A stretch of DNA of 30,721 nt, from NCBI RefSeq assembly GCF_000143415.4, contig NW_003314273.1:378100-408820 (forward strand). Reading direction: 5' to 3'. The DNA is from Selaginella moellendorffii (lineage: Eukaryota; Plantae; Lycopodiophyta). A program made the position numbers and the translations under genes. Below, in pieces: positions 1 to 27,887 of the stretch. The stretch's first letter is position 1. Each line of letters starts with the position of its first letter. The notes below the pieces were generated by a model. The model worked only from the letters and a program-made list of their open reading frames with translations. It did not search any database and was not told the DNA's origin.

Positions 1-387
1 AAGCCACCCGCTGGAGCAAACAAGAAGAAGGCAGCAGCAACCAAACAGGAGGACAAAGCTGCTGTGGCGAATGCTCCGGCTGCCGAGAAGACTGTGAAGG
101 AAGCCGCAAAGAGGAAGACGAAGACGGTGGCACCATCGCCGCCAGAGAAGAACGAGGCTGCCGGGGCGGCGGAGAACGTTGGAGCAGCGGTGAAGAAGAC
201 GAGATCAAAGAAGAACGCGGGGGCGAGCGATGCAATCCAAGGAGCACAGAAGAATGACCGCGCCACGGATGGAGCAGCGACGAAGAACACCAGATCAAAG
301 AAGAACGCAGGACTGAGCGATGCAATTCAAGGAGAAAAGAAGAATGGCAGCGCTCCGGATGGAAGTGGAGCGATCCCCAAGGTTTAG
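1..387 (+). CDS. 3' end of a gene encoding a Lys/Ala-rich low-complexity protein (5' part outside window)
   Basis: Frame +1 is open from base 1 (KPPAGANKKKAAATKQEDKAAVANAPAAEK...) to TAG at 385-387. Basic, low-complexity, with an internal 30-aa duplication; an AT-rich 3' region follows. Confidence 0.6.
   Translation, partial: KPPAGANKKKAAATKQEDKAAVANAPAAEKTVKEAAKRKTKTVAPSPPEKNEAAGAAENVGAAVKKTRSKKNAGASDAIQGAQKNDRATDGAATKNTRSKKNAGLSDAIQGEKKNGSAPDGSGAIPKV
181..360 (+). repeat. Two-copy 90-bp in-frame tandem repeat (GAAxKxTRSKKNAGxSDAIQGxxKNxxAxD)
   Basis: 181-270 and 271-360 align without gaps (ggagcagcg..gaagaa.ac.agatcaaagaagaacgc.g...gagcgatgcaat.caaggag...). Confidence 0.9.
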
Positions 388-518
388 GAACCACCAGTGA
401 CGCTGATCTGATAGTGATGTAGAAAAATGCGAGCGATTATTTTGATGATCTCAAAACCTTTGTTTTTGTCACCTTTCTTCCTTCTTTGCCAAATATAATA
501 TTTTGACCCACTCGATTC

Positions 519-3448
519 TTACGGTCTCACCTTTTTAACTTCATCGGGTCTTAACCTCTTGTGGAGCACCGAGAGGGAGCAGTGGAAGAGCTTTTCCAGC
601 TCCTCCAGCGTCTCCTCCACCGATTCCAAAAGATCGACTTCTCCGCGTTCCAGAGCGATGCCAAACTCGCTCTCCGAGCTCAGCTGGAAAATCCTTGCTT
701 TGCAGTGAGCGACCTCCGAAGATTTGGAGATGGAAGGTGACAGTTCTAGCACCACCTGTGGGAAGAGAAAAGCTTTGATCAAGAGAAACAAATCTAGACG
801 GGGTTGCTTACGCTCAGAGCCTTTGTAACAATGCGAGCTCCAGCATCGCAATCAGAAGCATCGTCACGTTTGGATGGTTCGAGTGGCCACAACGCTGCAG
901 CAAATGCAACACCACTCCCTGCAGATCATACACGCTCAACAAGAGAAAGAAGCCGGGATATGATACTAACCTGCTATAAGTCCTTTCGCTATAGAAGAAT
1001 TTATGGCTGTTGCTGCTTTTTGCATACGTCCCACCCTCTCATGGAAGTGATCGCGAGTAGCACCGCTAACCTGCGAACTAACAATCAGCACTGCTCGAGA
1101 AAACTCATCTTACCCGCAACTCCAAAACACTGCTCAGGGGCTGATTCTCCGAGACATTACCCGACCGGTAAACAATCACCTCATTCCTGCACATTACAAG
1201 CTGCAAGAAGGCTCAAGCATGTAGAAACTTATAAAAACTGCGAGCTTGATATATTACCTTGTTAGCTCTCCCGCGACAGCTGATAAAATCCGCTTTTTGA
1301 TTATCCACAAGCTTCCAGCAACAACAAATGCAAGTGAGGAAAGGAAAATGAGCAAACGAGACGTCGTTTTACCTCAACACCCAAATAAGTCCGTAAAGCA
1401 TTCAAGCTCTCGTTGCGCACTTTCAGAATCGTAATGTTAGACTGCAACAATCACGATGCTCAGCTCAAGATTTATTCGCAAAAGCCACACTTACCTTTAC
1501 ATTCTTGAGCATGTGCCCCTTATCCACATTCTTTGCAAAAACTACAAGCCGTGCGTACGCCTGAAAAAACATAGCATAAAGTTAAATTCCCTGCTCAAAA
1601 CGGAACAATAGAGCCTTACACCCTGAAAAAGTTTGTGCCAAAAACGGTCTAAGGTAGACGTGTCATTGCACAGCAGAACAGTGTAGTTTTGTGTGACCAC
1701 CATCTCTTGATTAAAACTCTTGAGTACTCGCTCAACAGAGATAACCAACGCGTCGAAGCATTCTACAGCATCGTCCTCCGCTATATCATTCTATGCAAAA
1801 GAATCCATACAGGATAACTGATAGAAAGGAGGACAAGAAAAAAACAAATTCTTACATCAACTATGATGTGACGAATTGAGGTTCCAATCTTGACTCTGGC
1901 CTGATCATCCAGAAGCTCTAGAAATTCCTCTCCCCCGTACAAACGGCCAAGCTGATGATCAAGTAAATCAAACCTGGAGAGAGTAAGCGAACTGTATAAG
2001 CTGTATTACCGTCAGGAAATGAGATGCAGTGGATGGTACTCTCGCCATTTCCCTCAAACATCCTCGCACTGTCTCGATCGAATCTATGAATCCGTGCCTG
2101 AAGCCGTCTGCTGGAACCCGTGTCATAGCCTCCATGTCAGCGACTGCAGCAGCTATAACATTCTCAGAGTAGAAACCTGCACAATCCACTGAATGTGTAT
2201 AGCAAAACTACCAACATAAGGCACAAGCTTACATGCTAAACTCCGTGCCTGTGAATTTGTGAATGCACTATGCCCAGAACAAAGTTAGCAAGAGACACAG
2301 CCGCAAAATAATGCTGACCTCTCGAACTGAAGACATCTATTGATTTCCTCGTCGTGCTGGCGTTTGAATACCATTCGTAACTTCTGTGCCGTCCATCCAT
2401 CTTTGCACACTCTGTCGCCGCAGGCGAGCCGGAGCAGTCCCTCGCAGAGAACCAATGATCCGTCCAGAAGCTTTCCGTCCAAGCCGCTACCATTCCAGAG
2501 AAAAACTTCACGCGCATTCCAGATGTTCGACACCACGTACTTGCCGGCTTTCACTCCGCTAATGTTTCCCTTGTCCGTCAGTAAGTTGTTCACGTTCTCT
2601 AAGCGATCCTGCAGATTCTCCTGAGTCCAAGGCAGAGTTTTCGCGAAATAGCCAACGCGATCTGGATCCTTCTTCCTGATCCGCTCGGCCCGAAGCTTCT
2701 GTTGCTTAGCGAAGGACGCGAAACCGTCGATGCTGCTGGACGGGTTGACAGAGATGACTCCGTAAGGGTCGAGGACGGACAGCCGCCACCTTGTTGCATC
2801 GATGGCAATAAGGTAGACGGGCCTCGGGGAGAAACCATTTTGCAGATTCTCCAGGCAAAGCTGGTTGCCGTAGGAAGCCAGCTCCATGCGCGTCTTCACG
2901 TTCCAATCCTTGACACTGTCCGTCTTACAGTCGATGACCGCGTCGTAACGAACATTCTCGGGTGGTATGGTGTCAAACACCTCGTTGGCGAGTGCCTCCT
3001 TGTCCGGGTTGTCCCAGAAGATCTCATCGTGCTCGCCCTTGAATTCTTCCAGCGCCTTCTTCGAGATTGTCCGCAGCACGAAGTCAGCTTGGCCTGAGTA
3101 TCCTGGCTCGAGTCGAAAATGAAAAGCGCCATCTTGTGCCAGATACAAGATCTTGCTTTTAACATGCGCCAGGCTTGGAAAGATTTGCTGAAACATAGCT
3201 CGGTAGTTGGATTCTTGGAAGGATGGGAATGCGGAATGGAGGCAGCGGAGAGGGCCGAAAACCGCGAAAGCCTTGACACAGCGGGGATCCATGACGGAGG
3301 AGAACTTGTCCATGGGGTTGCCGCTCTGCCAGGACCTCTGCGTCATGAACGGGAAGACGTTCAAACTCAAAGGTTTTGGTATGCTGCCACCTCTTCCCCA
3401 TCGACCTCTCTCACGCCCACCTTCACCGCTCTCGCTATCACTATCCAT
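519..3448 (-). CDS. 12-exon gene, ~776 aa: N-terminal PD-(D/E)XK nuclease-like domain fused to a highly divergent group I chaperonin (mitochondrial HSP60/Cpn60-like) domain
   Basis: Manual exons: 3448-2319, 2267-2233, 2188-2010, 1951-1856, 1790-1620, 1560-1495, 1441-1373, 1311-1258, 1200-1114, 1070-971, 918-812, 755-519. All introns are GT-AG, 43-65 nt, with consistent phases; total 2331 nt, no internal stop. Cpn60-like segments in correct order: KLLDGSLVLCEGL, RVCKDGWTAQK, FRHGFIDSIETVRGCLREMARVPST, LVVFAKNVD, GRANKLVMCRNEVIV, VLELRVSGATRDHFHERVGRMQKAATAINSSIAKGLIAGSGVAF, DAGARIVTKAL, GEVDLLESV. N-terminal motifs: GQADFVL, VIDCK, ELASY, VYLIAIDATRW. Confidence 0.75.
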
Positions 3449-3828
3449 TCCTAATATACCCTAATGAAACAATTGAATGATAAAGGTTGAGGTTTATAAG
3501 CCCTTCCTAAAAAATTTCATTGTGCAAACTATTCCTTTGGATTGACGCTCTTCTTTTTCAGGCAAATGTAACTGAATCGATTGGTCATGGGAGGAAATCA
3601 AATGCCGTTCGCAAGTGAGTGAGAGAGGCCTGCTTTGCGGAAAAGAAATTTAGCGACTAAGTAATGGAAAACATATAGTAATAGATACCATGTATATATC
3701 TATATGAAAACAAGGTGGGGAAACAGGATCGCAACACTACCATGATAAGCTTGTCACGCCTTGTCTCTCTCAAAATTCTCGGTGAAGTTCTTAGCAGACT
3801 TGGCTTTTAAAAAGTTAGGACATATATC

Positions 3829-9414: not shown

Positions 9415-10411
9415 ATGGCGGCAGCGTTCTCTCTCTCTCCGACCGCCCTGCGCGTCGGCCTCCGGCGGTGGCGTCCCGGCGCCACGATTAAATCCGCTAG
9501 GAGCAGCAAGAATGTGTTGTTGCGGCCAAGGATCGCGCAATGGCGAGCTCTCGGCGGCAGTGCGGTGCCGGGATGGAATGCCAAGGAATCGCCCTACGAT
9601 GTTCTTGGTAAGATTAAGATTTTGGTGGATCAGATCTTTCTTTCTCACACCTGATGTTGCTATCGAGGCGTGGAAAGAGATTGCAATGAAGAAGGAATCA
9701 AGTCTGCCTATCGCCGCTTGGCGAAGCTCTATCATCCAGACGGTACGAGCTTGTTTAGATCTTTCTTGTCAGGACGCTTAGCTTTATCTCTCTCAGTGTA
9801 CAGTGGAGATACCCAGCTACTGGAAGATGAAACCGTGGAGGGAAGATTTATAAAAATCCAGGCCGCGTACGAGCTCCTCACAAATCAAGAAGCTCGTCGG
9901 AGCTACGACTATGACAACAGAAGTGATCCCATGAAGGTTCGTAGTTTTCTTCTTCTCGGTGTTCTTTTCTTCTTTGTAATCGCTGGAACTTGTAACAGGC
10001 TTCCAAGGCTTGGATGGAATGGTTTATCAAGAAGAAGCAAGCATATGAGCAGAGAGGAGATCTGGCTGTGACTTTGTGGGCACAACAGCAGCAAAGAGAG
10101 ATGAATCTCAAAGCCCGTCAGCTTGCACGACACAAGGTGAAAAGTTCTCGGACACTGCTTTGCTTGTTCATACGGATAGATGTTTTCTTTCTGAATCTCA
10201 GATGGATCCGGAGGAGGAAAAGCGGATAATCGCGAAAGAGAAGCAAGCCTCCACGATCAACTTCGAGACCACTCTCAAGCGGCATACTTTGGTGCTGAAG
10301 AAACGAGACATCGAGAGGCGACGAAGCGAAGAAGAGGCTGCCAAGAACAAGCTTGTGCAGCAACTTCTCGCGTCCGAGGGCCTCGAGCTAGACGATGGAA
10401 AAGAAGATTAG
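9415..10411 (+). CDS. Chloroplast type III J-domain (DnaJ) protein, At1g77930/DJC65-like, 5 exons
   Basis: Transit-peptide-like MAAAFSLSPTALRVGLRR; J domain SPYDVLG..IKSAYRRLAKLYHPD..RFIKIQAAYELL..RRSYD; conserved tail PMKASKAWMEWFIKKKQAYEQRGD...TTLKRHTLVLKKRD...LLASEGLELD. Confidence 0.9.
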
Positions 10412-10477: not shown

Positions 10478-12286
10478 ATGGGATCGCTCCAATCGCAGTC
10501 GCCATGGGCCGATCTCGCGAAGCAAGTCACTCGTCACAGGAAACTCAGCGAAGCCGAGCGCGAATCCAAGCGTCGAGACGGCAATTCCACCCATTTCTTC
10601 GCGGACCAGCTCAAGTCGTGCAAGAGCCTCACGAAGGGTCGTCAAATCCACACCCAGATCCTCGAGACAAAACACTACCGCAACATCTTCCTCGCCAATC
10701 TGGTGATCGAGATGTACGGCAAGTGTGGCAGCGCCGAGGAGGCGCTACGAGTGTTCGAGGATCTGAGCGAACCCAACATATTTTCCTGGAATATCCTTCT
10801 CGCGGCGTTGTCACGCAATGGCGAGATCGATCGCGCCAGGATGGCGTTCGAGAAGATGCCGGTGAGAGACGCGGTGTCGTGGAATGCGATGATCGCAACA
10901 TATGCCCAGAACGGGCATCTAGAGAAAGCCAAGAACTTCTTCGATCGAATGCCCAAGAAGAACTCCATCTCCTGGAACTCGCTGATCATGGCGTACGCGC
11001 ACAGTGGATTCGTAGGCGAGGCGCGAAATCTTCTCTTCGCGATGCCGCAATGGGATCCAGTGTCGTGGACAACGGTGATCGCAGCGTATGCCGCCGTGGG
11101 AGATAGCAAGGAGGCCGTGATCCTCTTCCGGATGATGGATCTCGAGGGGATTCCCGCGGATGGAGTGGCTTTCGCGGCGGTGCTGGATGCGTGCGCGAGC
11201 CACTCGACGCTGTCCGACGGCGCGGCGATCCACGCGAGCATCCTCGAGAGTGGATTCGCAATCAGCACGGTGGTTTCCACCGGATTGGTGAACATGTATG
11301 GGAAATGCGGCAGGCTGCGCGAGGCGAGGGCGATCTTCGATGCGATCGCGTTCCGGGAGAGGGATCTGGTGCTGTGGACGTCGATGATCGCGGCGTACGC
11401 GCAGTGGGGGCGCGGCGAGGCCGCGATCGAGGCGTTCCAGAGCATGCTCTTGGACGGGATCGCGGCAGACGAGGTCGTGTTCATCAGCGTTCTCTGCGCT
11501 TGCAGCCACGCCGGGCTGCTGGAGCTGGGCTGCCAGTACTTTGCGTCGATCGAGCCGGACTATCGGGTAGCGATCGGCGTCCACCACTACGCCTGCGCGA
11601 TCGATCTCTTGGGAAAGGCTGGCTGGCTGGACGAGGCCGAGAGCTTGATCGAGAGGATGCCGTTTGATCCGGACGGCGCTTGCTGGACGGCGCTTCTGGC
11701 AGCGTGCAAGCTTCACAAGGATGGAGATCGTGCGGAGAGGGCGAGCGAGCGGGCGATGGCACTGGATCCCGACAGCGCCGCTCCCTACGCGCTGCTGGTG
11801 AAGATCCAGGGTGGCGGCGAGGCCTCCGAGCAGACGACGCGGCGGCGATTGGAGCGAGGGGTGCGCAAGCTCGTCCCGGGGTGTAGCTCCATCGTGGTGA
11901 GGGATCGGGTGCACGAGTTCACGGCCGGGGCGATGGATCATCCCCGCGCGGCGGAGATCTACGAGGAGCTGGAGCGTTTGAGGGCCCCCCTGGCGGAGGC
12001 GGGCTACGTCCCGGACACCGGAGTGGTGATCCAGGCGGTGGACGAGCGCGAGAAGGAGCGGATCGTGCTCGCGCACAGCGAGAAACTGGCAGTGGCGTTT
12101 GGGCTGCTCGCGACGCCCGCGAATTCGCCGCTGCGCGTCGTCAACAATCTCCGGATGTGCTCCGATTGCCACTCCGCCATGAAATTCATCGCGTCCATCA
12201 CCCGGCGCGAGATTGTGGTGCGCGATCTCATTCGTTTCCACCGCTTTGACGAGCAAGGGCGTTGTTCTTGCGGGGATTACTGGTGA
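10478..12286 (+). CDS. PLS-class pentatricopeptide repeat protein with E and DYW deaminase domains (organellar C-to-U RNA editing factor), intronless
   Basis: Repeated P/L/S motifs (LVIEMYGKCG, VSWNAMIATYAQNG, FISVLCACSHAG); PG box KLVPGCSSIVV; HSEKLA and CSDCH zinc ligands; terminal CSCGDYW. First ATG at 10478. Confidence 0.95.
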   Translation: MGSLQSQSPWADLAKQVTRHRKLSEAERESKRRDGNSTHFFADQLKSCKSLTKGRQIHTQILETKHYRNIFLANLVIEMYGKCGSAEEALRVFEDLSEPNIFSWNILLAALSRNGEIDRARMAFEKMPVRDAVSWNAMIATYAQNGHLEKAKNFFDRMPKKNSISWNSLIMAYAHSGFVGEARNLLFAMPQWDPVSWTTVIAAYAAVGDSKEAVILFRMMDLEGIPADGVAFAAVLDACASHSTLSDGAAIHASILESGFAISTVVSTGLVNMYGKCGRLREARAIFDAIAFRERDLVLWTSMIAAYAQWGRGEAAIEAFQSMLLDGIAADEVVFISVLCACSHAGLLELGCQYFASIEPDYRVAIGVHHYACAIDLLGKAGWLDEAESLIERMPFDPDGACWTALLAACKLHKDGDRAERASERAMALDPDSAAPYALLVKIQGGGEASEQTTRRRLERGVRKLVPGCSSIVVRDRVHEFTAGAMDHPRAAEIYEELERLRAPLAEAGYVPDTGVVIQAVDEREKERIVLAHSEKLAVAFGLLATPANSPLRVVNNLRMCSDCHSAMKFIASITRREIVVRDLIRFHRFDEQGRCSCGDYW

Positions 12287-12423
12287 GTCAACGAGTCAAC
12301 GAGTAAATTCTAGGGCAGCCGAATTTCTAGCGTTAGATATTTTTGGGGGCGATTCTTTTCTTCCCTCACATGTTTGTGTCTCATATTTGCTTTCCCTTTC
12401 TACCCTAGCTCGAGCTCCCAGCT

Positions 12424-13895
<1,472 letters not shown>

Positions 13896-26800: not shown

Positions 26801-27244
26801 TTTGAAATATGATGATATATATGATCTCGCACACCCGAAAGACTACCATGAAATCTTTTTTGTTGTAATTGACTATCTTTATTGTTGTAAGATAATTAGA
26901 GTTAATTGTAGTTTGATATTGAATTGGTGGAATTTTATTTGATGGGGCATTTTTCATAGTCAATTACTAGCAATGAGTGTGTTATTATTGCTTTTTACTA
27001 CTTTACTTAGTGGGTGGAAGTTGGTGCTAATGCTAGTACATCTATGACTGGTATTAAATGCTTTCTCCCTAATTGAGTGGTGTTTTAGCATTCTCATCTA
27101 GAGCTGATTTTCTTAGACAATAGTTTTACATTTATGGATGAAGCATTTTATATTTTAACATCTTAACTAAGGATATATCACACTTTCACAAGTGTTTATC
27201 ATCCACAAATGAATGATTTGGTGAAATAGCTCATTAGACCTTCA

Positions 27245-27887
27245 AAAAGATGATCACAATGTATAAGAATTTTTAATATTGAGATTAGGATTATTATTTT
27301 TCATATCTTCAATATGTGTATATCATAGGGGTATAGGGTGTTTTACCATATAAAGTATTATATATGGTCATGATCTAACATTGCCAATAGAGTTGAGTTT
27401 ACTTTTACGATTGCTATGAGTTGCTAGGACCTGGGATTAATATTTGATGACCATTCTTAAAAGGATGATCACAATGTATAAGAATTTTTAATATTGAGAT
27501 TAGGATTGTTATTTTTCATATCTTCAATATGTGTATATCATAGGGGTATAATATGTTTTACCATATAAAGTATTATATATAGTTATAATCTAACATTGCC
27601 AATAGAGTTGAGTTTATTTTTACGATTGCTATGAGTTGCTAGGACCTGGGATTAATATTTGATGACCATTCTTAAAAGGATGATCACAATGTATAAGAAT
27701 TTTTAATATTGAAATTAGGATTGTTATTTTTCATATCTTCAATATATGTATATCATAGGGGTATAAGGTGTTTTACCATATAAAGTGTTATATATGGTCG
27801 TGATCTAACATTGCCAATAGAGTTGAGTTTACTTTTACGATTGCTATGAGTTGCTAGGACCTAGGATTAATATTTGATAACCATTTT
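27245..27887. repeat. Three-copy 215-bp tandem repeat, apparently derived from a decayed integrase-like sequence
   Basis: gatgatcacaatgtataag anchors at 27249, 27464 and 27679; copies nearly identical. Upstream sequence reads FTSVYHPQMNDLVK (YHPQxNG-like). Confidence 0.92.

What the first reader, a model, noticed from the sequence alone, without database searches (positions are those of the whole stretch)
519..3448. Nuclease-chaperonin fusion: PD-(D/E)XK-like domain joined in frame to a divergent HSP60
Seen: the ORF track shows only fragments, but 11 short GT-AG introns join them into one uninterrupted ~776-aa frame. The chaperonin part starts inside the large first exon (~aa 312, nt ~2515): NAREVFL..KLLDGSLVLCEGL..RVCKDGWTAQK, compared with GroEL/HSP60 AKDVKFG..KMLRGVNVLADAV..KVTKDGVTVAK. 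The fusion therefore does not depend on a splice guess. Established: group I chaperonins form heptameric rings and are not normally fused to enzymes. Inference: a lineage-specific protein in which a repurposed chaperonin fold acts as an oligomeric scaffold, sensor or decoy controlling a nuclease effector (defence, cell-death or selfish-element-like architecture). I know of no described family with this architecture, but could not search.
Basis: partly seen in the sequence, partly recalled or inferred. Interest (0 to 1): 0.92.

Follow-up and report, generated by a model that had tools for sequence, protein, structure and literature searches.

The report
Selaginella gene with degenerate chaperonin tail
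A rarely expressed, lineage-restricted Selaginella moellendorffii gene model joins a rare plant module with a nuclease-like motif to the remnant of a GroEL/HSP60-type chaperonin that lacks key ATPase residues, but no transcript yet shows that the two halves are one protein.

Summary
**Verdict: partly confirmed.**

**Gene model.** The minus strand 3448-519 holds 12 exons joined by 11 GT-AG introns, giving 772 aa. The other haplotype copy (GL377565.1, about 97% identical) is also intact and keeps all 22 splice sites. Spliced RNA contigs confirm 4 of the 11 introns.

**Chaperonin part.** Only aa ~618-772 is demonstrably GroEL-like. It scores 22.5 bits against my 161-sequence GroEL profile, while 200 shuffles reach at most 1.9. 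The best PHROG hit for this part is "chaperonin groEL". Language-model features also call aa 377-584 Cpn60_TCP1, which is a lead only. Pfam finds nothing. The residue equivalent to the GroEL catalytic Asp398 is Lys, and no LGPKG or DGTTT motif is detectable.

**Start of the chaperonin.** That stretch is conserved in homologues without a chaperonin part: a 417-aa standalone transcript and an Adiantum gene. It shows no similarity to GroEL.

**Fusion.** It therefore rests on the exon 1-2-3 splices, which no read covers.
- For: the exon-1 donor has the same position and phase as an annotated Adiantum donor, and the frames are compatible.
- Against: exon 1 is absent from the one run with spliced contigs.

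**Nuclease assignment.** It rests on a conserved D...(D/E)xK motif only. The AlphaFold model failed (pLDDT 32).

The scan noted the same architecture on another piece of this genome (s1-418381).

The parts
2319..3448 (-). Exon 1 (aa 1-376, intronless). It encodes a rare land-plant module, conserved from about aa 44 (NPMDKF) to aa 376. GC3 is 0.66, against 0.50 for the other exons.
   Evidence: The ORF is. A whole-library phmmer search found only 3 relatives: P0001 (the Selaginella allele), P0002 (Adiantum) and P0003 (a standalone 417-aa transcript). The alignment is A1.
2924..3085 (-). Candidate PD-(D/E)XK-type signature: Asp122 (3085-3083, in G-x-x-D-F) and Asp173-Cys-Lys175 (2932-2924).
   Evidence: The motif is read directly from the sequence. 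P0003 has the equivalent G-x-x-D-F and I-I-E-S-K. The Adiantum locus has V-S-S at that place and in-frame stops upstream. The fold is not verified.
2268..2318 (-). Intron 1 (51 nt, GT..AG). Its donor lies after aa 376, in phase 2.
   Evidence: The annotated Adiantum exon ends at the homologous residue, 4 aa after the conserved Cys, also as AG|GT in phase 2. The donor is conserved in the other haplotype. No RNA read covers it.
2233..2267 (-). Exon 2 (35 nt, aa 377-388). This is the bridging micro-exon on which the fusion depends.
   Evidence: The frame is open under the model. The GenBank model P0001 uses the same exon. There is no RNA support.
1114..2176 (-). Exons 3-9 (aa 389-625). This is the probable intermediate and apical part of the chaperonin remnant. 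Its sequence similarity to GroEL is not significant.
   Evidence: The ESM Atlas features of P0001:365-572 gave 59 of 60 nearest clusters as Cpn60_TCP1, score 0.92. HMM and global profile tests stayed at shuffle level. Introns 1952-2009 and 1791-1855 are confirmed by spliced contigs.
519..1200 (-). Exons 9-12 (aa 597-772, stop at 521-519). They hold the GroEL-homologous C-terminal equatorial segment: aa 624-695 align to GroEL 379-449, and G-S-G-V-A-F stands for G-G-G-V-A-L.
   Evidence: - Smith-Waterman against E. coli GroEL gave z of 6-7.5, with 0 of 200 shuffles as high.
- A global hhalign gave z of 11.9.
- A six-frame scan of the window put exons 11 and 10 at the top, colinear.
- PHROG 5725 'chaperonin groEL' hit at E 0.026.
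- Introns 1071-1113 and 919-970 are confirmed by a spliced contig.
1017..1019 (-). Lys643, at the position of the GroEL catalytic Asp398.
   Evidence: The HMM alignment maps R-V-E-D to R-M-Q-K. The codon was checked against the sequence. The role of D398 in ATP hydrolysis is established knowledge of GroEL.

Best explanation
This is a chimeric protein-coding gene, restricted in what can be searched to Selaginella moellendorffii. Its allele is annotated as SELMODRAFT_402960.

**Architecture**
- A large intronless 5' exon encodes a rare land-plant module with a conserved D...(D/E)xK, nuclease-like signature.
- Elsewhere this module exists without a chaperonin: a 417-aa standalone transcript and an Adiantum gene.
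- The exon is spliced, through a donor shared in position and phase with an annotated Adiantum donor and so probably ancestral, onto eleven small exons.
- Those exons derive from a group I chaperonin (GroEL/HSP60/Cpn60) paralogue.
- The chaperonin remnant probably keeps only the intermediate, apical and C-terminal equatorial parts.

**Likely function (inferred)**
- The N-terminal equatorial segment with the LGPKG and DGTTT nucleotide-binding motifs is not detectable.
- The catalytic Asp398 equivalent is Lys.
- It therefore most likely cannot hydrolyse ATP. It would serve as a passive binding or oligomerisation scaffold for the N-terminal module, not as a foldase.
- The N-terminus is acidic and has no evident transit peptide, which suggests a cytosolic or nuclear protein.

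**Shown**
- An intact frame in two haplotypes.
- Purifying selection on the chaperonin exons.
- GroEL homology of the last ~150 aa.
- Splicing of 4 introns.
- Very low or conditional expression.

**Inferred**
- The exon 1-2-3 joins, that is, the fusion itself.
- The nuclease fold and activity.
- The scaffold role.
For: **Gene model and selection**
- The 772-aa model has 11 GT-AG introns.
- The second haplotype is intact, with all splice sites kept. CDS indels are all multiples of 3; intron indels are not.
- dN/dS for exons 2-12 is 0.24 (9.5 synonymous against 7.5 non-synonymous changes). The binomial P against neutrality is about 0.002-0.008.
- Spliced contigs confirm 4 introns, including exon 4, which the GenBank model missed.

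**Chaperonin homology**
- See for the C-terminal segment.
- Cpn60_TCP1 is the nearest family by language-model features for two segments. One of them excludes the strongly similar region.
- D398 is replaced by Lys and GGG by GSG.

**Fusion**
- The exon-1 donor shares position and phase with the annotated Adiantum donor.
- Exon 1, exon 2 and exon 3 are frame compatible.
- Only about 110 nt separate the exon-1 ORF stop (2285) from exon 3 (2176). That leaves no room for a separate promoter.
- No chaperonin N-terminal exons lie elsewhere in the window.
Against: - No read or contig covers exon 1 or the exon 1-2-3 junctions.
- In run X1, low-depth contigs cover about 45% of exons 3-12 but none of the 1130-nt exon 1. 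This is a rough argument; 3' bias or filtering could explain it.
- Three deep RNA-seq runs, each about 12% sampled, give zero reads on 448-3671, while both neighbours are expressed.
- If unspliced, exon 1 would give a 387-aa protein resembling the standalone P0003.
- Exon 1 evolves almost neutrally between the haplotypes: dN/dS is 0.62, P = 0.19.
- GC3 differs between the halves, 0.66 against 0.50.
- No Pfam, PDB or NCBIfam hit for either half in the forms that could be submitted.
- aa 377-617 is not significantly GroEL-like by sequence.
- The nuclease fold is unverified.
- No orthologue with the fused architecture was found.
Confidence: 0.55

Rival explanations
1. Two adjacent units have been wrongly joined. 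Exon 1 would be a standalone gene (387 aa, stop at 2285) like P0003. Exons 3-12 would be a separately transcribed, N-terminally truncated chaperonin paralogue, starting at Met403 or Met406.
For: - Run X1 has spliced contigs on exons 3-5 and 9-11 but nothing on exon 1.
- The exon-1 ORF runs on to its own stop.
- The homologue P0003 is a complete standalone transcript.
- GC3 and dN/dS differ between the two halves.
- The exon-1 family and the chaperonin part have no shared relatives.
Against: - Only about 110 nt separate the exon-1 stop from exon 3, on the same strand.
- The exon-1 donor shares position and phase with the annotated Adiantum donor.
- The frames are compatible through the 35-nt exon 2.
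- A product starting at Met403 would begin in the middle of the presumed intermediate domain.
Confidence: 0.28
2. One reading: a near-complete divergent HSP60 begins inside exon 1 at aa ~312. The nuclease-chaperonin fusion would then be encoded without any splice.
For: - A visual resemblance of three short motifs to the GroEL N-terminus.
- A greedy hhalign path (mact 0.05) runs colinearly from exon 1 to the C-terminus with P = 0.001.
Against: - aa 300-376 against GroEL gives z of 0.15.
- aa 200-376 and 300-376 stay at shuffle level by HMM and by global profile alignment.
- The exon-1 family profile against GroEL gives 1% probability.
- The stretch, including E-G-L-L...G...W, is conserved in P0002 and P0003, which lack any chaperonin part.
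Confidence: 0.06
3. This is a decaying or non-functional locus: a chimeric pseudogene or a transcribed relic with no protein function.
For: - No reads in three deep RNA-seq runs.
- Orphan status.
- ATPase motifs are lost.
- Exon-1 dN/dS is not distinguishable from 1.
- The Adiantum relative carries in-frame stops and has lost the (D/E)xK motif.
Against: - The 772-codon frame is intact in two haplotypes that differ by 1.4-2.5%.
- 4 of 4 CDS indels are in frame.
- All splice sites are kept.
- dN/dS is 0.24 on exons 2-12.
- Correctly spliced RNA exists.
Confidence: 0.1

Closest known systems
Group I chaperonins (GroEL / mitochondrial HSP60 / plastid Cpn60; Pfam PF00118 Cpn60_TCP1)
   Same: The C-terminal equatorial segment is homologous: aa 624-695 align to GroEL 379-449. 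It includes the G-G-G-V-A-L loop (here G-S-G-V-A-F), and Asp495 appears kept. The distance from exon 2 to this segment (241 aa) matches GroEL 136-375 (240 aa).
   Different: - No Pfam hit in the submitted forms.
- No detectable N-terminal equatorial segment or LGPKG/DGTTT motifs.
- Asp398 is replaced by Lys.
- No evident transit peptide.
- Preceded by an unrelated 376-aa module.
- The middle part is not recognisable by sequence profiles.
Chaperonin-derived domains and pseudo-chaperonins: the Cpn60_TCP1-type domain of Fab1/PIKfyve; BBS6/MKKS, BBS10, BBS12 (from established knowledge, not tested here)
   Same: These are precedents for a chaperonin fold reused as a non-foldase scaffold, either inside a multidomain enzyme or as a degenerate paralogue.
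   Different: They derive from group II (CCT/TCP-1) chaperonins, are widely conserved in eukaryotes and have different partners. This remnant is group I-like and known from one species.
PD-(D/E)XK nuclease superfamily (for example HSDR_N, PF04313)
   Same: A G-x-x-D-F...h-h-(D/E)-x-K signature is conserved between Selaginella and P0003. HSDR_N appears among the language-model neighbours, at rank 37 with score 0.86.
   Different: There is no profile hit and no confident fold. The spacing between the Asp and the (D/E)xK is long (51 aa). The Adiantum relative lacks the motif.
Exon-1 family proper: P0003 (Logan SRR8210169 transcript, 417 aa) and Adiantum capillus-veneris KAI5063774 (P0002)
   Same: 25-31% identity over aa ~167-372, with 23 invariant positions. 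Adiantum has an annotated intron at the same position and phase.
   Different: Neither has a chaperonin-like continuation. P0003 ends 15 aa after the homologous boundary. The Adiantum model continues into a Lys/Glu-rich tail.

Membership tests
Group I chaperonin (Cpn60_TCP1, PF00118) | Match to the family profile above the curated threshold | tested here: not met
   Pfam hmmscan at E<=10 gave no Cpn60_TCP1 hit for P0001 (the mis-spliced allele), for P0001:300-612 or for single exons. The correctly spliced 772-aa protein could not be submitted because it has no reference.
Group I chaperonin (Cpn60_TCP1, PF00118) | Significant homology to GroEL sequences | tested here: met
   Met only for aa ~618-772:
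- 22.5 bits against a 161-sequence GroEL HMM, shuffle maximum 1.9.
- Smith-Waterman z of 6-7.5.
- PHROG groEL hit at E 0.026.
Group I chaperonin (Cpn60_TCP1, PF00118) | Full three-domain layout (equatorial, intermediate, apical) colinear with GroEL | tested here: inconclusive
   aa 377-617 scores at shuffle level by HMM and by global profile alignment. Language-model features call it Cpn60_TCP1. No structure could be predicted for the spliced protein.
Group I chaperonin (Cpn60_TCP1, PF00118) | ATP-binding and hydrolysis residues (LGPKG, DGTTT, Asp398, GGG414-416) | tested here: not met
   Asp398 is Lys643 and GGG is GSG. No segment aligns significantly to GroEL 1-135.
PD-(D/E)XK nuclease superfamily | Catalytic D...(D/E)xK signature | tested here: met
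   Asp122 and Asp173-Cys-Lys175 are read in the sequence. Equivalents are present in P0003 but absent from the Adiantum locus. This is motif-level evidence only.
PD-(D/E)XK nuclease superfamily | Restriction-endonuclease-like alpha-beta-beta-beta-alpha-beta core fold | tested here: inconclusive
   AlphaFold2 on a 4-sequence alignment gave mean pLDDT 31.7 and pTM 0.22, which is unusable. No fold search was run on it.
PD-(D/E)XK nuclease superfamily | Profile match to any described nuclease family | tested here: not met
   No nuclease family in Pfam, NCBIfam, PADLOC or PHROGs at E<=10; PHROGs gave only two weak matches to families of unknown function. The PDB profile search with A1 gave 0 hits.

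The most novel reading that the evidence does not exclude
The 772-aa fusion is really made. A catalytically active PD-(D/E)XK-type nuclease is tethered to an ATPase-dead, group I chaperonin-derived ring or scaffold that gates or targets it, for example in stress-induced or defence-related nucleic-acid cleavage. This would be a domain combination not described in any organism.
Probability: 0.1. Interest if true: 0.75.

Novelty: new variant of a known kind. Interest (0 to 1): 0.42.

Why it matters
If the fusion is real, it would be a rare documented case of a group I chaperonin being truncated, stripped of its ATPase residues and recruited by exon shuffling as a domain of another protein. It would also define a small, so far undescribed plant protein family, the exon-1 module.

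Its reach is limited. The gene is known from one species, it is barely expressed, and its function is unknown.

As it stands, it also corrects the public gene model SELMODRAFT_402960. That model skips exon 4 and part of exon 5 and has a frameshifted C-terminus.

Tried and rejected
**Family and structure searches**
- Pfam, NCBIfam and PADLOC gave nothing on exon 1, single exons, P0001, P0002 or P0003. PHROGs gave only weak hits.
- A PDB sequence search and a PDB profile search gave nothing.
- AlphaFold2 of exon 1 with the 4-sequence alignment gave pLDDT 31.7, so the model was discarded and no fold search was run.
- The only referable full-length protein (P0001) is mis-spliced, and an alignment padded with GroELs would merely impose the GroEL fold.

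**Homologue searches**
- All three word-indexed searches found no further relatives: whole P0001, the A1 profile, and P0001 region 365-612.
- An exact-product look-up of an unspliced exon-1 protein, for both haplotypes, found nothing in the public assemblies.

- I tested the alignment of aa 312-356 to GroEL 2-60 and rejected it.
- My own earlier visual alignment of exon 3 to GroEL 78-135 was dropped. The hhalign alternative, exon 3 to GroEL ~140-200, is not significant either.

**Other**
- Chaperonin N-terminal exons upstream of exon 1, or elsewhere in the window: none.
- Paralogues within the window: none.
- Literature searches for the locus tag, the accessions and SRR8210169 found nothing. 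A search for the architecture returned no relevant paper among those listed.
Full report
**Organism and locus.** The window is colinear at about 97% DNA identity with Selaginella moellendorffii scaffold GL377565.1 over 9.4 kb. It is therefore the second haplotype, or a very recent duplicate, of the locus annotated there as SELMODRAFT_402960 (P0001, 670 aa, "hypothetical protein"). The gene lies on the minus strand. Upstream is a DUF7906 gene whose expressed 3' end reaches about 3672. Downstream is a convergent gene below about 450.

**Checking the observation: the gene model.** Reading the minus strand, I built a 12-exon model with 11 GT-AG introns of 43-65 nt. It gives an open 772-aa frame ending at the stop at 521-519. 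The evidence that this is a real coding structure is as follows.
- In the other haplotype the same model is open and all 22 splice dinucleotides are conserved.
- The four indels inside the CDS are 27, 12, 3 and 12 nt, all in frame. The three intron indels are 8, 2 and 8 nt.
- Between the haplotypes, exons 2-12 show 9.5 synonymous against 7.5 non-synonymous changes. That gives dN/dS of 0.24 and a binomial P of about 0.002-0.008 against neutrality.
- Exon 1 shows 8 against 18, giving 0.62 and P = 0.19.
- Contigs of run X1 carry joints that skip exactly introns 3 (1952-2009), 4 (1791-1855), 9 (1071-1113) and 10 (919-970). All have CT..AC ends on the plus strand, which is GT..AG on the gene strand.
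- These contigs also show that the GenBank model P0001 is wrong. It skips exon 4, truncates exon 5 and is frameshifted after exon 10.

**Expression.** Three deep RNA-seq runs gave no read on 448-3671, while both neighbouring genes were covered at depths of roughly 2-54. About 1.4 Gb of each run was read. Only X1 shows transcripts, at a word depth of about 3. Expression is therefore very low or conditional.

**Is there a chaperonin?** Yes, but only the C-terminal end can be demonstrated.
- Smith-Waterman of the spliced protein against E. coli GroEL (L004) gives a score of 77 against 40 +/- 5-6 for shuffles. That is z of 6-7.5, with 0 of 200 shuffles as high. It aligns aa 621-697 to GroEL 375-451.
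- A profile I built from 81, then 161, GroEL sequences scores the C-terminal part at 16.9 bits (E = 9e-8 for a single comparison). aa 618-772 scores 22.5 bits, against shuffle maxima of 5.1 and 1.9.
- A global profile alignment of aa 618-772 to GroEL 376-525 has z = 11.9.
- In a six-frame scan of the whole 30.7-kb window, the two best fragments are exons 11 and 10, hitting adjacent profile positions 413-448 and 380-414.
- In the independent PHROGs library, the best family for P0001:365-612 is "chaperonin groEL", E = 0.026, same region.
- The rest is weaker. aa 377-617 scores no better than shuffles, locally or globally.
- The ESM Atlas feature search returned Cpn60_TCP1 for 60 of 60 neighbours of P0001:365-612. 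It returned it for 59 of 60 neighbours of P0001:365-572, a segment that excludes the strongly similar region.
- By the tool's own calibration that is a lead, not proof. That it names the very family found independently next door makes chance unlikely.
- Pfam itself gave no Cpn60_TCP1 hit for any form I could submit. The correctly spliced protein has no reference and could not be submitted.

**State of the chaperonin part.** In the HMM alignment the GroEL R-V-E-D(398) stretch is R-M-Q-K, so the aspartate needed for ATP hydrolysis (established GroEL biochemistry) is Lys643. G-G-G(414-416) is G-S-G. Nothing aligns significantly to GroEL 1-135, which carries the LGPKG and DGTTT nucleotide-binding loops. 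No such exons lie elsewhere in the window. This is a degenerate, most probably ATPase-dead, N-terminally truncated chaperonin remnant.

This fails.
- aa 300-376 against GroEL has z = 0.15.
- aa 200-376 and 300-376 stay at shuffle level with both profiles and in global alignment.
- A profile of the exon-1 family against the GroEL alignment gives 1% probability and aligns other residues.
- An exhaustive phmmer search of 1.8 billion representatives with exon 1 found only three proteins: the allele P0001, an Adiantum capillus-veneris protein (P0002) and a Logan transcript product (P0003).
- Both distant relatives align through aa 364-372 of exon 1.
- P0003 sits on a 1971-nt contig with UTRs on both sides and ends 39 aa after the conserved Trp.
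- The 10 kb downstream of the Adiantum gene shows no chaperonin-like sequence.
- The contested stretch therefore belongs to the exon-1 module.

**Is the fusion real?** It now depends on exon 1 splicing to the 35-nt exon 2 and on to exon 3. No read or contig covers those joints.

In favour:
- The annotated Adiantum exon ends at exactly the homologous residue, four residues after a conserved Cys. It also ends as AG|GT in phase 2. The donor at 2319|2318 therefore looks ancestral, so the large exon would not be a terminal exon. The Adiantum splice itself comes from a gene prediction whose RNA support I could not check.
- The phases of exons 1, 2 and 3 fit the chaperonin frame.
- The exon-1 ORF stop (2285) lies only about 110 nt from exon 3 on the same strand, which leaves no space for another promoter.

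Against:
- X1 contigs cover about 45% of exons 3-12 but none of the 1130-nt exon 1. On a crude Poisson argument I would expect about 4 contigs there. 3' bias and the tool's filters could explain the gap.
- The unspliced exon-1 product (387 aa) would resemble the standalone P0003.
- The halves differ in GC3 (0.66 against 0.50) and in constraint.

I put the fusion at roughly 0.55-0.6.

**The N-terminal module.** The PD-(D/E)XK reading rests on a signature only. G-x-x-D(122)-F and h-h-D(173)-C-K(175) are matched in P0003 by G-x-x-D-F and I-I-E-S-K. The Adiantum locus has V-S-S at that place and in-frame stops upstream. No nuclease family was hit in Pfam, NCBIfam, PADLOC or PHROGs, and the PDB searches gave none either. 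AlphaFold2 on the 4-sequence alignment gave pLDDT 31.7. The Atlas feature neighbours are unnamed fungal clusters, with HSDR_N only at rank 37. The assignment is plausible but unverified.

**Most likely mechanism.** This is a chimeric gene made by exon shuffling. The 3' part of a gene of the exon-1 family was replaced, downstream of its probably ancestral phase-2 intron, by the exons of a group I chaperonin paralogue. Those exons start near the equatorial/intermediate domain boundary. The span from exon 2 to the conserved segment is 241 aa, against 240 aa for GroEL 136-375; this is an inference. The remnant cannot be expected to cycle ATP. Selection on it (dN/dS 0.24) suggests it is kept as a binding or oligomerisation scaffold for the N-terminal module. 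The acidic N-terminus argues against organellar import (inference). Ring formation, nuclease activity and any defence role are untested.

**Comparison with known systems and novelty.** The closest known are group I chaperonins, with membership only partly met (see the table). As functional analogies, the closest are the chaperonin-derived domain of Fab1/PIKfyve and the BBS6/10/12 pseudo-chaperonins, all group II-derived (established knowledge, not tested here). Searches for the locus tag and accessions found no paper, and a search for the architecture returned nothing relevant among those listed. I rate it a new variant of a known kind: a degenerate chaperonin paralogue with an unusual, still unproven, N-terminal partner. 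It is an orphan in one species with marginal expression. Another first-stage note (s1-418381) describes the same architecture on another piece of this genome, most likely the other haplotype copy. It is not independent evidence.

Noticed in passing
L001:6001-8858 (GL377565.1; protein P0001 = EFJ38778.1 / D8QNL1): The public gene model SELMODRAFT_402960 is mis-spliced. It replaces exon 4 with 12 intron-derived residues, drops the last 27 codons of exon 5 and reads exons 11-12 in the wrong frame. Under the 12-exon model this haplotype is fully open.
   Followed up: yes
window 180-363 (+ strand ORF 64-387): A 90-nt unit repeated twice (84% match) lies inside the Lys/Ala-rich end of the convergent neighbouring gene. 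That gene is expressed in all three RNA-seq runs.
   Followed up: no
window 27244-27885: A 215-nt tandem repeat, 3 copies at 95% match, lies inside a 30% GC block (27-29 kb). A second AT-rich block lies at 22-24 kb. These may be repeat or transposon-derived sequence.
   Followed up: no
window 11001-13000: A GC-rich island of 58-65% GC, against about 45-50% elsewhere in the window.
   Followed up: no
L002:9300-10650 (Adiantum capillus-veneris CM043961.1): The Adiantum relative of exon 1 extends upstream of the annotated start of KAI5063774, with an N-P-M-D-K-F block at about 9575-9784. It has in-frame stops between that block and the annotated ORF. So either there are unannotated introns or the copy is decaying.
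   Followed up: partly
window 3449-3700 vs L001: The 5' flank of the gene is the most divergent stretch between the haplotypes: 19 mismatches and 68 gap columns in 217 aligned bases. Synonymous divergence in the exons (about 0.035) is higher than intron divergence (0.012). The numbers are small.
   Followed up: no
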